A DNA stretch of 63,760 bases, counting the filler, from Hyphochytrium catenoides (taxonomy: Eukaryota > Protista > Hyphochytriomycota): assembly GCA_900088475.1 (NCBI GenBank). It is 11 parts of 11 records of this genome, joined end to end, with 100 filler letters (N's around TTAATTAATTAA, not from the genome) between each part and the next. Parts side by side here need not be neighbours in the genome. Positions count along the whole stretch, not along the records: positions 53,761 to 56,486 come from FLMG01000541.1; 10 more parts are not named here. One strand, 5' to 3'. The position numbers were made by a program, and so were the translations under genes. Below the pieces are notes generated by a model. The model saw only the letters and a list, made by a program, of their open reading frames with translations. It was not told the DNA's origin and made no database searches. Below, piece after piece: positions 53,761 through 57,219 of the stretch; positions within the stretch are counted from its first letter, which is position 1, and the number at the start of each line of letters is the position of its first letter.

Positions 53761-54030
53761 TAGTGCGGGGTGTCTGGATATACCGGAGAAAAGTTTTGTA
53801 CGCTCCGGGATTTGAACCCAGGACCTCTGTCTTTGATGCCGACACCCTAACCACCAGTATGCACCATACACCAAACGTACTCTTGATTAATCTCCGTTTT
53901 TGTTTATATACCAGGGATTATCCCCTCTGCGTCGTCCGCTGTACACTCTTTGGTTTCAGCGTCGATCACAGTTCAACACTCCCCCGGAATCTAGAGAACT
54001 CTGTAAGCTCTAGATTCAAATGAAACTGAT
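53761..54030 (-). mobile_element. TRIM copy 1: 3' LTR (starts TGTTG at 53978, truncated by the gap), PPT and hairpin
   Basis: The reverse complement is about 90% similar by eye to LTR 54585-54800. PPT at 53979-53985 and hairpin at 53987-54017. Confidence 0.85.
53797..53880 (-). ncRNA. tRNA-like Pol III gene inside the TRIM LTR (copy 1)
   Basis: Acceptor stem GTACGTT/AGCGTAC plus discriminator A, A-box TGGTGTATGG, T-arm CTGGG-TTCAAAT-CCCGG, TATATAAA at -30 (53903-53910) and TTTT at 53789-53792. The anticodon arm is non-canonical. Confidence 0.8.
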
Positions 54031-54036
54031 CTTAAA

Positions 54037-54584
54037 TGTTGACGTGTGGGGGGTACTTGGGAAATTGGAAAGTGAGATTAGAATGACGTGGCGGCCGGAC
54101 CAGAAGATGCGGCCTTATCCTCACAGCCACCCATTTAGATGGTGGTCTAATTGCAATAGATATTACTAGCAGCTAACTATGCTATCTTGTAATGGCGATA
54201 TCTCAGCAACTAGAAAGAGTTAGAAGCTGAGATTTGGATAGTATAAGGACTGCCGTCCGTACTACCGGACCCTACATCCAATACTTCCCCGCAGTATGAA
54301 CAATCTAGCGAGTACTGGAGTTCTTAGAATCACCACGAGCGCCCAATGCAACACGAAACTCACGAAAACGAGGCCAAGGAAGACCCTTGGTCAGAACATC
54401 AGCCGTCATATCACACGATTTCGTAAATGTCAGCCTGATACTCCCGGATGATGTTACCTTCTCTCGGATAACACAGTGCTTCACATCCATGTGCTTGGAC
54501 TTGGGTCGAGCCATCTCGCAACCGTGATCGTGCTCTTGTTATCCTGGAAGAAGAAAAAATCGGTCCCTTCTGAGGACATCCTAG
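54037..54584 (-). mobile_element. Copia remnant: RNase H C-terminus, PPT and 3' LTR (about 54037-54283)
   Basis: FQDNKSTI..KSKHMDVKHCVIREKV..DMTADVLTKGL..F. PPT ctgcggggaag at about 54284-54294. LTR runs TATTGG (mutated TG)...TCAACA. Confidence 0.8.
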
Positions 54585-54998
54585 TGTTGGACTGTGATTG
54601 ACGCTGAAACCAAAAAGTGTACAGCGGACGACGCAGAGGGGAAGAACCCCTGGCATATTAACAAAGACGGAGATTAGTCAAGTGTACGTTTGGTGTATGG
54701 TGCATACTGGTTATGGTGTCGGCATCGAAGACAGAGGTCCTGGGTTCGAACCCGGAGCGTACAAACCTTTTTTCCGGTATATCCAGACACCCCCCAATAT
54801 TAATTCAAAGTGCTCACCATCCACAATGATAAAACCTAACATGGTGTACGCTCCGAACGATTTAACTCGGGCCATTCGCTTCTGTGACCACGGATGACCA
54901 TCACAATTCCATTTGAATCTAGAGCTTACAGAGTTCTCTAGATTCCGGGGGAGTGTTGGACTGTGATGGACGCTGAAACCAAAAAGTGTACAGCGGAC
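54585..54998 (+). mobile_element. TRIM copy 2: 257-bp 5' LTR (54585-54841), PBS 54842-54855, 112-bp internal region, PPT 54947-54953, 3' LTR from 54954 interrupted at 54998
   Basis: LTR termini are TGTTGG...CTAACA. TGG follows the LTR immediately. GGGGGAG precedes a direct repeat of the first 45 LTR bases. No ORF. Confidence 0.88.
54684..54763 (+). ncRNA. tRNA-like Pol III gene inside the TRIM LTR (copy 2)
   Basis: Acceptor stem 54684-54690 pairs with 54756-54762, discriminator A at 54763. A-box 54691-54700, B-box GGTTCGAACCC, TTTTTT at 54768-54773. Confidence 0.8.
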
Positions 54999-56141
54999 TG
55001 TTGAGAGCAGAAGCTGACAAGAGCTCTAAAAGGATCACAGTTCCAGACTCTATCTGACAAGAGGAAGAAGGCACAAAACAAAAAAGTTTCAGAGTTATGA
55101 TAACTAGATTATTATCATCAGGTAAGTCATCATATGACGTCAAGAAGTAGTAACTGGGTCTAGTAGTTTATACGAGACACAGTTACTCTCCAGAGCAACT
55201 AGACAACGTGATAACTAGGAAACAGGGTCCCATAAGCTCTTCATACTCACTTCGAGTATATCAGTAGACCACATAACCTAACAAAGAGTGTCTTCAAATC
55301 CCATACATTATAACAGGTTATCGGCCCACGCCCCCTCCAGGACTTCAGCGAGCTCTCTGGACCAACCAAACCAAGACTAAGAACAAGACTAACCCCTGGA
55401 GTAACCAGCTCTCCTCCAGGATCAAGACCAACACCACCCCTGGAGTATCCAACTCTCCTCCGGATCGGAACCCGAAGACCATTGCCGTTACCATCCCCAG
55501 TTGTGAATTCACACTCAACGAGTGAATTTACCAGCTTTGTGTCAATTATTGCCAATCTTCTGTCAATTATTCCGATATTTGACAGGATATTTGACAGTAA
55601 TTGACCATACTTGACACTTTTGTGAATTGACAGCCAAAGGTCTTATTCCACAAAAAGTGTCAATTATACCAGTGTGCCGTGTAAAATATACCCTTTTGGA
55701 CATTTTGTCAAACTCCCGTATCCCCTCTACTTCCAGAGAAAATGGACTCTCGAACCTCAGGAACTCTATCCGTCAACAAGCTTTAGGGACGAGACGACTA
55801 CCCTATCTGGAGTGTCAAAATGGAAGCCTATCTGGACGAGCTAGGTCTACTGGTCCACATTACGGATCCGGAACCCTCTGGAGCCTCTACAGCGGACACT
55901 AAAAAAGGGGGACAAGAAAACCGCAGGACGTGAACACGACTCAGAATGGCTCAGGGATGACAAGAAAGCCTAAAACAAGATTGTCCTTGCCGTGTCCGAC
56001 AACCTCGTGCGCTTTTACCAAGGAAGAAGGGAACTGCCAGGGAGGCATGGTTGAAATTGCAAGAGGAGTTCGAGAGCCGCAATGTCAACAATATTCTGAC
56101 AACCCTCATCTCTTCCCTTACCAACAAACATAGGGATGGAG
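54999..56141 (+). mobile_element. Copia element 5' part: LTR-B (54999-55315), PBS (55316-55329), degenerate gag (about 55740-56130)
   Basis: LTR TGTTGAG...ATAACA, then GGTTATCGGCCCAC, then GRDDYPIWSVKMEAYLDELGLLVHI, which resembles the gag at 58716-59258. Confidence 0.85.
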
Positions 56142-56470
56142 TGTTATAATGTATGGGATTTGAAGACACTCTTATTTAGGTTATGTGGTCTACTGATATG
56201 CTCGAAGTGAGTATGAAGAGCTTATGGGACCCTGTTTCCTAGTTATCACGTTGTCTAGTTGCTCTGGAGAGTAACTGTGTCTCGTATAAACTACTAGACC
56301 CAGTTACTACTTCTTGTCGTCGTGTGATGACTTACCTAATGATAATAATCTAGTTATTATCATAACTCCGAAACACTTTGTTTTGTGTCTTCTTCCTCTT
56401 GTCAGATAGAGTCTGGAACTGTGAGCCTTTTAGAGCTCTTGCAGCTTCTGCTCTCAACACCTCCCCGCAG
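56142..56470 (-). mobile_element. Copia 3' LTR-B (56142-56459) with PPT, opposite orientation
   Basis: Near-identical reverse complement of 54999-55315, preceded on the minus strand by ctgcggggagg. Confidence 0.88.
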
Positions 56471-57219
56471 GTCCAGACTTCCTGAGNNNNNNNNNNNNNN
56501 NNNNNNNNNNNNNNNNNNNNNNNNNNNNNNTTAATTAATTAANNNNNNNNNNNNNNNNNNNNNNNNNNNNNNNNNNNNNNNNNNNNTCTCTCTCTCTCTC
56601 TCTCTCTCTTTCCTTCTGAGTGTGCCTCGTTCCTCTTAGGTCTTCTAAGATAAGCTAGCCTCTTTTTTCCCTTTCGCCCCTTTCTCTCTTGTTTGGTATC
56701 TTGTCTCTCCTTTGCCTACTCGCGTCCTGAGGCTTCTACAGATAGGAAGACCTACTCCGCTGCTTCAGAAAGGTGGAGACGAGTTAGCTGGGTCAGCAGA
56801 AGAAGAGAGAGCAGCGCCTGGGAGGAGGGAAGAGAGAGGAGACTCACGGACCCATAGCATCGCCCTTTTGAGTGATGATGAGCACTCCCGCTGACTCTGT
56901 GTTGAAAGCTCTGAATAGATCTCTCTCTCCCTCTCTCTCTCCTCGAAGTCTCCTGTTCTTTAACTGTTGTGTCTATCTTTCCCCTTCCTCCATCCTCCTT
57001 TTTCATCTCTCCGTCTTTCCTTTCACTTTCCTCTCTCTTCCTTCTCTCCTTCTCTTCCGCTGGGTCTCGAAGACACGTTTTGCCCTCTATTTCACTCTTC
57101 TCTCTTCTTGTCTCTCCTTTTCTCTCATCCACTCTCTCCTCTCTCTCTCTCTCTGTCTCTCTCTCTCTCTGTGTCTGTCTGTCGCTCTCTCTCTCTCTGT
57201 ATCTCTGTCTCTCTGCCTC

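What the first reader, a model, noticed from the sequence alone, without database searches (positions are those of the whole stretch)
54585..54998. Miniature LTR retroelement that appears to encode its own tRNA-like RT primer
Seen: the LTR holds a tRNA-like unit ending ...CGGAGCGTACA (54753-54763). Directly after the LTR's terminal CA lies PBS TGGTGTACGCTCCG (54842-54855), whose reverse complement CGGAGCGTACA-CCA is a 14/14 match to that RNA plus CCA. The CCA is not genomic (the next bases are AAC), so the match requires tRNA-type 3' processing and CCA addition. Known: LTR elements normally use host tRNAs as primers, and TRIMs with small-RNA-derived LTRs exist (Cassandra with 5S; Helenus with a tRNA-like LTR, from memory), where the unit is read as a promoter. 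Inference: this roughly 630-bp element supplies a private primer. I do not know this as a described mechanism.
Basis: partly seen in the sequence, partly recalled or inferred. Interest (0 to 1): 0.93.

Follow-up and report, generated by a model that had tools for sequence, protein, structure and literature searches.

The report
Mini retroelement matching its own tRNA-like RNA
A tiny, very abundant LTR retroelement carries a tRNA-like gene in its repeats whose end, once given the usual CCA tail, fits the element's own reverse-transcription start site exactly, so it may supply its own primer instead of borrowing a host tRNA; this is not yet proven.

Summary
Positions 54585-54998 hold a Helenus-type TRIM: a 257-bp 5' LTR (TG..CA), a PBS, a 112-bp non-coding interior, a PPT, and a 3' LTR cut after 45 bp by a nested Copia LTR. 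The LTR carries a tRNA-like unit (54684-54763) with an intact acceptor stem and T arm but a decayed lower half. Its last 11 nt plus a non-templated CCA are a 14/14 complement of the PBS (54842-54855). No such match occurred in 20,000 LTR shuffles.

The family has hundreds to thousands of copies in the source organism. No variant reaches 10% in either matching segment. LTR ends in other copies confirm that the PBS starts directly after CA.

The only paper on Helenus (Kojima 2024) looked for this complementarity and found none in any described family. This family is not in that paper's data set.

The interpretation, a self-encoded primer, is plausible but unproven (about 0.45). The host's tRNA set could not be reached, so a host tRNA with the same 3' end (about 0.35) remains open. 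No RNA data were available.

Verdict: a real and unusual variant of a known element type, worth a direct test.

The parts
54585..54841 (+). 5' LTR of TRIM copy B, 257 bp, TGTT...AACA termini
   Evidence: Direct repeat with 54954-54998. In other copies the flanks diverge before 54585 and after ...CTAACA (loose ends).
54654..54661 (+). TATA-box position, 30 nt upstream of the unit. It reads TATATAAA in the family consensus and in copy A, and is mutated in this copy (CATATTAA).
   Evidence: Consensus changes 54654 C>T and 54659 T>A. Copy A sequence in the alignment.
54684..54763 (+). tRNA-like unit. Acceptor 5' strand 54684-54690, A-box-like TGGTGTATGG 54691-54700, B box and T arm 54740-54755, acceptor 3' strand 54756-54762, discriminator A at 54763. 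This copy has a 3-nt and a 1-nt deletion relative to copy A.
   Evidence: ARAGORN at relaxed threshold, fold, no Rfam hit.
54753..54763 (+). The unit's 3' terminal 11 nt, CGGAGCGTACA, which together with an added CCA complement the PBS.
   Evidence: No variant at 10% or more across family contigs.
54768..54773 (+). T run 5 nt after the unit, a candidate RNA polymerase III terminator. T6 here, TTTTCT in the consensus.
   Evidence: 54772 T>C in nearly all contigs.
54842..54855 (+). Primer-binding site TGGTGTACGCTCCG, directly after the LTR's CA.
   Evidence: Invariant at the 10% level in the family.
54856..54953 (+). Rest of the 112-bp non-coding interior. It includes a weak T-arm-like stretch next to the PBS, a 10-bp hairpin (54915-54924 / 54936-54945) and the PPT CGGGGGAG (54946-54953).
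54954..54998 (+). First 45 bp of the 3' LTR, cut by the insertion of a Copia-type LTR that starts at 54999.
53761..54028 (-). Second copy of the same TRIM (copy A): tail of the interior, PPT (53979-53987) and 3' LTR from 53978 down to the piece edge. Its tRNA-like unit lies at 53797-53880.
   Evidence: Inverted repeats I2, I3, I5-I7, ARAGORN tRNA-Leu(tag), alignment.

Best explanation
[quoted passage not shown] Its primer-binding site has come to match the element's own tRNA-like RNA.

Proposed mechanism; every step here is inferred:
1. The unit has a TATA box at -30, an A-box-like motif, a perfect B box and a T run 5 nt downstream. It is transcribed, most likely by RNA polymerase III, from the many LTR copies.
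2. Its intact acceptor/T-arm half is what RNase P, RNase Z and the CCA-adding enzyme recognise. It is therefore trimmed after the discriminator A (54763) and receives CCA.
3. The resulting RNA, about 84 nt plus CCA, anneals to the 14-nt PBS of full-length TRIM RNA.
4. It then primes minus-strand synthesis by the reverse transcriptase of an autonomous, presumably Copia-type, partner.

Shown here: the anatomy, the exact CCA-dependent complementarity, its constancy across the family, and the LTR boundary that places the primer's 3' end at T54842.

Not shown: transcription, processing, CCA addition, packaging and priming.
For: 1. There is a 14/14 complement that includes the non-genomic CCA, located exactly at the unit's 3' end. 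None of 20,000 shuffles reached it.

2. Across hundreds of contigs of the source organism and one rhizosphere-metagenome copy, no variant reaches 10% in 54753-54763, 54684-54690 or 54842-54855. The U3 part of the LTR, by contrast, carries several intermediate-frequency variants. About 15-20 distinct contigs in run X2 cross the LTR/PBS junction zone.

3. The LTR ends at ...CTAACA in 3'/solo-LTR contexts. The primer must therefore pair from T54842 onward, which means it ends in CCA.

4. The unit keeps a 7-bp acceptor stem, a 5-bp T stem and a 7-nt T loop while its lower half has decayed (no Rfam tRNA hit). The only polymorphism in the T loop is purine to purine at position 57 (54748 G/A). This suggests selection on the RNA's top half.

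5. The T run right after the unit fits a short tRNA-like transcript better than a promoter that must read through the whole element.

6. A scan of 241 million metagenome contigs for any canonical T loop followed by CGGAGCGTACA found no tRNA gene with this end. The 8 hits were all bacterial coding DNA.

7. From general knowledge: acceptor stems that start with GUACG are unusual among eukaryotic tRNAs; tRNA-like RNAs such as mascRNA are known to be CCA-tailed; and in Ty1, primer use follows PBS complementarity.
Against: - There is no expression or CCA-tail evidence. No RNA run or raw-read run was offered.
- The host genome's own tRNA genes could not be searched. A host tRNA with the same 3' end would explain the PBS in the ordinary way.
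- No covariation was seen, only joint conservation in a fairly young family. With about six polymorphic sites in 370 nt, that is weak evidence.
- The match stops at 14 nt. The next bases match the unit poorly (extension p about 0.03).
- The consensus terminator is only T4 (TTTTCT).
- More than 110 described fungal Helenus families show no such match (PMC10886601), so the unit clearly does not need to be a primer.
- A self-encoded primer has no precedent in LTR elements.
Confidence: 0.45

Rival explanations
1. Ordinary host-tRNA priming. A normal host tRNA ends in ...CGGAGCGUACA-CCA and primes both this TRIM and its autonomous partner. The unit in the LTR is a captured, decayed copy of that tRNA's gene (or of a SINE derived from it) and still shares its 3' end. 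The unit acts only as a promoter or has no role.
For: - Host tRNA priming is the rule for LTR elements. Fungal Helenus PBS types track those of Copia families in the same genome (PMC10886601).
- The unit has a gene-like trailer and T run, as expected from a captured tRNA gene.
- The PBS-adjacent bases in the consensus (..CTCCGAGCG) do not match the unit but could match a host tRNA with a slightly different T stem. That stretch can form a T-arm-like hairpin, CCGAG/CTCGG, with changes that are compensatory relative to the unit's CTGGG/CCCGG.
- The PBS bin has about twice the contig depth of neighbouring interior bins, which might mean that other elements share the PBS.
Against: - It needs a coincidence: the captured tRNA species would have to be the primer species, roughly 1 in 45. 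It also needs 11/11 identity to survive although the unit's D and anticodon arms have decayed so far that Rfam does not recognise it.
- No tRNA with this end was found in 241 million metagenome contigs.
- None of the primer types listed for rust Copia/Helenus (iMet, Tyr, Ile, Asp, Asn) gives this PBS. The four TGG-type families read have TGGTAGCG...
Confidence: 0.35
2. The complementarity serves an RNA structure or regulation rather than priming by the unit. One possibility is a long-range stem between the unit's 3' strand and the PBS in the full-length RNA that closes the U5 loop. Another is unit-derived 3' CCA fragments that mask the PBS and limit transposition. In either case the real primer is something else.
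For: The leader RNA's predicted minimum-energy fold pairs 54753-54762 with the PBS in cis. U5-PBS stems and PBS-targeting 3' tRNA fragments are known in other retroelements (general knowledge).
Against: - The fold is no more stable than shuffles (z about 0).
- A structural stem does not explain why the TGG matches a CCA tail and why the match ends exactly at the discriminator base.
- A real primer that ends in ...ACCA would still be needed, which leads back to one of the first two explanations.
Confidence: 0.08
3. Tf1/Tj1-like self-priming in cis. The full-length RNA folds back, the genome-encoded 11 nt pair with the PBS, and a nuclease cut after A54763 makes the primer without any CCA.
For: The 11-nt genome-encoded complement is the same length as the Tf1 self-primer. 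Self-priming is established in fungi (PMC4600332). The cis pairing is predicted.
Against: - In Tf1/Tj1 the complement is the 5' end of the mRNA. Here it lies 70-80 nt into the probable transcript, given the TATA box at -30 from the unit.
- A CCA-less primer would place TGG inside the LTR, but LTRs end at CA in other copies. This holds unless integrase trims 3 nt.
- TGG between CA and the 11-mer would then be a 1/64 coincidence.
- Tf1-type elements are Ty3/Gypsy-like, whereas the neighbours and fungal Helenus partners here are Copia-like.
Confidence: 0.05

Closest known systems
Helenus TRIMs of Pucciniales and some Agaricomycetes (Kojima 2024, PMC10886601)
   Same: Two roughly 250-bp LTRs with a tRNA-derived unit near the LTR's 3' part followed by a short T run. 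A roughly 110-bp non-coding interior with PBS and PPT. TGTT..AACA termini, high copy number, and Copia elements as neighbours.
   Different: No sequence similarity to any consensus in that paper's Data S1. The PBS is not of the iMet, Tyr, Ile, Asp or Asn types. The PBS is a perfect complement of the element's own unit plus CCA, which that paper states it could not find in any family.
Cassandra (5S rRNA-bearing TRIM of plants) and Ajax
   Same: A TRIM with a small-RNA gene-derived, RNA polymerase III-type unit in each LTR.
   Different: There the unit is 5S-derived and is read as a promoter. The PBS matches host tRNAs (tRNA-Leu for Ajax), not the unit.
Tf1/Tf2/Tj1 self-priming retrotransposons (Levin 1995-1998; PMC4600332)
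   Same: The element supplies its own primer, and the PBS is complementary to a sequence in its own LTR.
   Different: Tf1 uses the first 11 nt of its own mRNA in cis, cut by RNase H, with no CCA. Here the complement is the 3' end of a tRNA-like unit and needs a non-templated CCA, which implies a trans-acting, tRNA-style processed RNA.
mascRNA/MEN-beta tRNA-like small RNAs (recalled from memory, not checked here)
   Same: A non-tRNA with an acceptor/T-arm top half that is cut by RNase P and RNase Z and then CCA-tailed.
   Different: These are host lncRNA by-products with no role in reverse transcription.
Ty1 / copia priming by initiator tRNA-Met
   Same: A short (10-14 nt) PBS directly after the LTR's CA. 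Primer choice is set by complementarity. Extra contacts to the primer's T arm exist in Ty1.
   Different: The primer is a host tRNA. The Copia-type LTR nested at 54999-55316 in this very piece uses the usual anticodon-stem iMet-type PBS (GGTTATCGGCCC, 55317-55328).

Membership tests
Helenus (TRIM with tRNA-derived sequence in the LTR) | Two LTRs flanking a short non-coding interior (TRIM size) | tested here: met
   The 5' LTR is 257 bp and the interior 112 bp. The 3' LTR's first 45 bp match at 43 of 45 positions, then are cut by a nested insertion. A rhizosphere-metagenome contig shows the LTR-interior-LTR order (joint 54951 to 54583).
Helenus (TRIM with tRNA-derived sequence in the LTR) | tRNA-derived sequence with box A and box B in the LTR | tested here: met
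   ARAGORN calls copy A at the default threshold and copy B at a relaxed one. The B box GGTTCRA..CC is present, and TGGTG..TGG is present in box A. Rfam's tRNA model gives no hit, so it is tRNA-like and not a tRNA.
Helenus (TRIM with tRNA-derived sequence in the LTR) | PBS just after the 5' LTR and PPT just before the 3' LTR | tested here: met
   TGG-type PBS at 54842-54855 and PPT CGGGGGAG at 54946-54953.
Helenus (TRIM with tRNA-derived sequence in the LTR) | 5-bp target-site duplication (fungal Helenus) | tested here: inconclusive
   The 5' flank is CCTAG (54580-54584). The element's 3' end is lost to the nested insertion, and copy A runs off the piece.
Helenus (TRIM with tRNA-derived sequence in the LTR) | Sequence similarity to a described Helenus family | tested here: not met
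   Twelve motifs of 8-16 nt from the LTR, unit and PBS were searched in Data S1. None matched, apart from an unrelated TGGTGTAC. It is therefore an undescribed family. The older Repbase entries (LTR-1_PGr and others) were not all available to check.
Host-tRNA-primed LTR retrotransposon | PBS complementary to the 3' end (with CCA) of a host tRNA | not testable with these tools
A scan of metagenome contigs found no tRNA with this end, which is only weak evidence.
Tf1/Tj1-type self-priming element | PBS complementary to the 5' end of the element's own mRNA; primer without CCA | tested here: not met
   The complement lies at the 3' end of the unit, about 70-80 nt after the probable start. The first 3 nt of the PBS (TGG) are matched only by a non-templated CCA. 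LTRs end at CA.
Functional tRNA gene | Canonical cloverleaf with sound D and anticodon arms and an isotype-consistent anticodon | tested here: not met
   The anticodon stem is almost all G-U and the D stem has 3 weak pairs. There is no Rfam hit. The thermodynamic fold keeps only the acceptor stem and the T arm.

The most novel reading that the evidence does not exclude
This is an LTR retroelement that encodes its own tRNA-style primer. Each LTR carries a small RNA polymerase III gene, and its processed, CCA-tailed product primes reverse transcription at the element's own PBS. Primer and PBS are then a private pair that can evolve together, independent of the host tRNA pool. That would be a third way of priming LTR elements, beside host tRNAs and Tf1-type cis self-priming.
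Probability: 0.45. Interest if true: 0.9.

Novelty: new variant of a known kind. Interest (0 to 1): 0.72.

Why it matters
LTR retrotransposons and retroviruses are known to start reverse transcription in two ways. Most use a host tRNA. The Tf1 group uses a piece of its own mRNA. An element that carries a gene for its own tRNA-like primer would be a new solution.

It would give the conserved tRNA-like units of Helenus-type TRIMs a function beyond "promoter". It would also show how a parasite of a parasite can reduce its dependence on host factors.

The only published study of these elements looked for exactly this and reported its absence. This family is therefore the test case, and the idea can be checked with one tRNA scan of the genome and one tRNA-seq experiment.

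If a host tRNA with the same end exists, the finding becomes a curiosity: the captured tRNA happens to be the primer species.

Tried and rejected
- Chance match: rejected. No match in 20,000 shuffles.
- Rfam: no tRNA or other meaningful family in the piece. There were only two sub-threshold miRNA look-alikes in the Copia leader.
- More copies or relatives from JGI metagenome contigs: a 20-mer of the unit gave 0 hits.
- IMG/VR scans for the LTR-end+PBS 17-mer and the T-arm+acceptor 22-mer: 0 hits each.
- Any tRNA with this 3' end in metagenome contigs: 8 hits, all chance matches in bacterial coding DNA, none a tRNA.
- Routes to more host DNA through proteins: an exact look-up of the 69-aa Copia pol tail found nothing. 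A homologue search with the 99-aa ORF that spans the TRIM found nothing. The pol tail found one 104-aa ENA metagenome fragment on a 955-bp scaffold, of no use.
- Sequencing runs: only Logan contigs of DNA runs were offered, with no RNA and no raw reads. Expression, RNA ends and CCA tails could not be examined.
- Covariation between the PBS and the acceptor stem: not testable, because neither varies at 10% or more.
- Extended complementarity beyond 14 nt: only marginal (p about 0.03 anchored, about 0.3 unanchored). It is not used as evidence.
- Tf1-like cis self-priming: considered and largely rejected because of the TGG/CCA match and the LTR end at CA.
- Origin of the unit by read-through copying of the primer tRNA: rejected. 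That would put an antisense tRNA copy next to the PBS, not a sense copy with a gene-like trailer inside the LTR.

Full report
**What is there.** The piece (53761-56486) is a nest of retroelements.

- At 54585-54998 on the + strand lies a miniature LTR element, copy B.
  - Its 5' LTR spans 54585-54841 (257 bp, TGTTGG...CTAACA).
  - The primer-binding site TGGTGTACGCTCCG lies at 54842-54855, directly after the LTR's CA.
  - The non-coding interior is 112 bp and ends in a 10-bp hairpin (54915-54945) and the polypurine tract CGGGGGAG (54946-54953).
  - The first 45 bp of the 3' LTR (54954-54998) match the 5' LTR at 43 of 45 positions.
  - The 3' LTR is cut at 54998/54999 by the LTR of a Copia-type element.
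- A second copy (copy A) lies inverted at 53761-54028. It comprises the interior tail, the PPT and a 3' LTR that runs off the piece edge.
- Between the two copies lies the 3' end of another Copia-type element on the minus strand: pol tail, PPT and LTR.
- The inferred nesting order is copy A, then a Copia inserted into it, then copy B inserted into that Copia, then a second Copia inserted into copy B.
- Weak Pfam matches (DUF4219, Retrotran_gag_2) in the stop-ridden gag at 55787-56140 confirm that the second element is Copia-type.

**The tRNA-like unit.**

- ARAGORN calls the unit of copy A (53797-53880, minus strand) as an 84-nt tRNA-Leu(tag).
- The unit of copy B (54684-54763) has a 3-nt and a 1-nt deletion and is called only at a relaxed threshold.
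- Rfam's tRNA model does not hit either copy at E<=1.
- The drawn cloverleaf and the thermodynamic fold agree. The 7-bp acceptor stem (GTACGTT/AGCGTAC, discriminator A) is intact. So is the T arm (CTGGG-TTCAAAT-CCCGG). The D stem has 3 weak pairs and the anticodon stem is nearly all G-U.
- The unit therefore keeps the top half of a tRNA, which holds the B box. From general knowledge, that half is also what RNase P, RNase Z and the CCA-adding enzyme recognise. It cannot be a working tRNA.
- In the family consensus a TATATAAA box lies 30 nt upstream (54654-54661; mutated in copy B).
- A T run lies 5 nt downstream. It is T6 in copy B and TTTTCT in the consensus.

**The observation.**

- The unit's last 11 nt (54753-54763, CGGAGCGTACA) followed by CCA are the exact reverse complement of the 14-nt PBS.
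- The genome has AAC (consensus AAA) after the unit, so the CCA is not encoded.
- None of 20,000 shuffles of the LTR produced an 11-nt match anchored at the primer's 3' end anywhere in the LTR. Here the match lies exactly at the discriminator base.
- Beyond 14 nt the similarity to the unit's T arm is only marginal (p about 0.03 anchored, about 0.3 unanchored). I do not rely on it.

**Family-wide check.** Logan contigs of three DNA runs of the (coded) source organism and one rhizosphere metagenome were laid on 54500-55050 at 80% likeness or more.

- 96, 564 and 236 contigs of the organism mapped.
- A junction-specific contig with depth about 230, against summed LTR depths of up to about 410,000 in run X2, suggests on the order of a thousand or more LTR copies. 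LTR depth is 2-4 times interior depth, which fits many solo LTRs.
- Many positions of copy B differ from the family majority. Several U3 positions are polymorphic (54644, 54647, 54662, 54683).
- No variant reaches 10% in the acceptor 5' strand, the 3' terminal 11 nt or the PBS.
- The one polymorphism in the T loop is G/A at tRNA position 57, where tRNAs always carry a purine.
- The metagenome copy has the same PBS and the same unit end.
- Upstream flanks diverge just before 54585. In 3'/solo-LTR contexts, diverse flanks follow ...CTAACA. The LTR therefore ends at CA, and a standard primer must pair from T54842, so it ends in CCA.
- Because nothing varies, covariation could not be tested. In a young family, joint conservation alone is weak evidence.

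**What is known.**

- The element fits Helenus, the TRIM group with tRNA-derived LTR sequences that Kojima described in 2024 from rust fungi, a few Agaricomycetes, animals and Selaginella (PMC10886601).
- Architecture and sizes match that group. Several Puccinia families there have LTRs of 254-262 bp and interiors of 115-120 bp.
- None of twelve motifs from this element occurs in that paper's consensus file, apart from an unrelated octamer. This is an undescribed family.
[quoted passage not shown] - I read four of its TGG-type families myself. They have iMet-type PBSs (TGGTAGCG...) that do not match their own units.
- No later paper on the subject was found.
- The present family is therefore the first Helenus-type element in which the tested-and-rejected idea is at least sequence-compatible.

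**How it most likely works.** The primer must be an RNA that ends in ...CGGAGCGUACACCA. Only two sources are realistic.

*(a) The unit itself.* It would be transcribed from the many LTR copies, trimmed after A54763 and CCA-tailed.

For:
- The unit's top half is intact while the rest has decayed.
- A T run directly behind the unit suits a short transcript better than a read-through promoter.
- A GUACG acceptor is unusual (my own knowledge).
- No tRNA gene with a canonical T loop and this 3' end exists in 241 million metagenome contigs. The 8 hits were all bacterial coding DNA.
- 11/11 identity would be hard to keep between a host tRNA and a pseudo-tRNA that is otherwise this diverged.

Against:
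- There are no RNA data at all.
- The consensus terminator is only T4.
- The match ends at 14 nt.
- There is no precedent.
- More than 110 Helenus families keep such units without any PBS match.

*(b) A host tRNA with the same end.* The unit would then be a captured copy of its gene.

For:
- This is the default mechanism.
- The bases next to the PBS (consensus CTCCGAGCG...) could fit a slightly different T stem.
- The PBS bin has about double the contig depth of its neighbours, which could mean that other elements share the PBS.

Against:
- It needs the captured tRNA species and the primer species to coincide.

I put (a) at about 0.45 and (b) at about 0.35.

*Minor rivals.*
- Tf1/Tj1-type cis self-priming (PMC4600332) is unlikely, about 0.05. 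The complement is not at the mRNA's 5' end. TGG would be a 1/64 coincidence. LTRs end at CA.
- A purely structural or regulatory role for the pairing is possible, about 0.08. Cis pairing is predicted, but the fold is no more stable than shuffles. This reading still needs a CCA-ended primer from (a) or (b).

**Limits.**
- The organism's name is coded. I infer a TE-rich fungus from the Helenus architecture, the Copia neighbours with an iMet anticodon-stem-type PBS, and the presence of the family in soil and rhizosphere metagenomes. It was not identified.
- Attempts to reach more host DNA through proteins failed.

**Verdict.** The self-primer reading is mechanistically coherent but untested, and one ordinary rival remains open. 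It is a new variant of a known element type. A genome-wide tRNA scan and a CCA-specific tRNA-seq run would settle it.

Noticed in passing
window 53761-56486: Four-layer nesting. TRIM copy A (minus strand) is interrupted in its interior by a Copia element's 3' LTR (54037-54289, minus strand). That Copia's pol tail (54305-54584) is cut by TRIM copy B. Copy B's 3' LTR is cut by a second Copia LTR at 54999. The TRIM family was therefore active both before and after the first Copia insertion.
   Followed up: partly
window 54999-55316 and 56143-56459: Two copies of one 317-bp Copia-type LTR lie in inverted orientation (96-100% complementary). The first is a 5' LTR followed by a PBS of the iMet anticodon-stem type (GGTTATCGGCCC, 55317-55328). 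The second is a minus-strand 3' LTR preceded by its PPT (56460-56470). These are two copies head to head, not one element.
   Followed up: partly
window 55741-56140: The Copia gag remnant has several in-frame stops and frame changes. Pfam hits are weak: DUF4219 (E 2.9e-05) and Retrotran_gag_2 (E 0.017), both below the curated cut-offs.
   Followed up: partly
window 54852-54871: The bases just after the PBS can form a hairpin (consensus CCGAG-CGATTTAA-CTCGG). Its reverse complement resembles a T arm whose stem differs from the unit's by compensatory changes. The similarity is only marginally above chance (p about 0.03). It might record the real primer's T arm or be a Ty1-like extra primer contact.
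   Followed up: partly
window 54842-54860: In all three organism runs the bin that holds the PBS has about 1.5-2.8 times the summed contig depth of the next interior bin. This might mean that other element families share this PBS, or it may be unitig noise.
   Followed up: no
window 54915-54945: A perfect 10-bp inverted repeat (GAATCTAGAG / CTCTAGATTC, 11-nt loop) lies directly before the PPT. It is identical in both TRIM copies.
   Followed up: no
window 54870: A subfamily carries a 12-nt insertion (GCAATATAGTGA) behind 54870. It is seen in one organism run and in the rhizosphere-metagenome copy. The family, or a close relative's, is present in soil and rhizosphere metagenomes.
   Followed up: no
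window 55528-55670: The leader of the second Copia element holds repeated TGTCAATTA-type motifs and small hairpins. These gave two sub-threshold Rfam miRNA look-alikes (mir-153, mir-1265; E 0.27 and 0.82), most likely chance.
   Followed up: no
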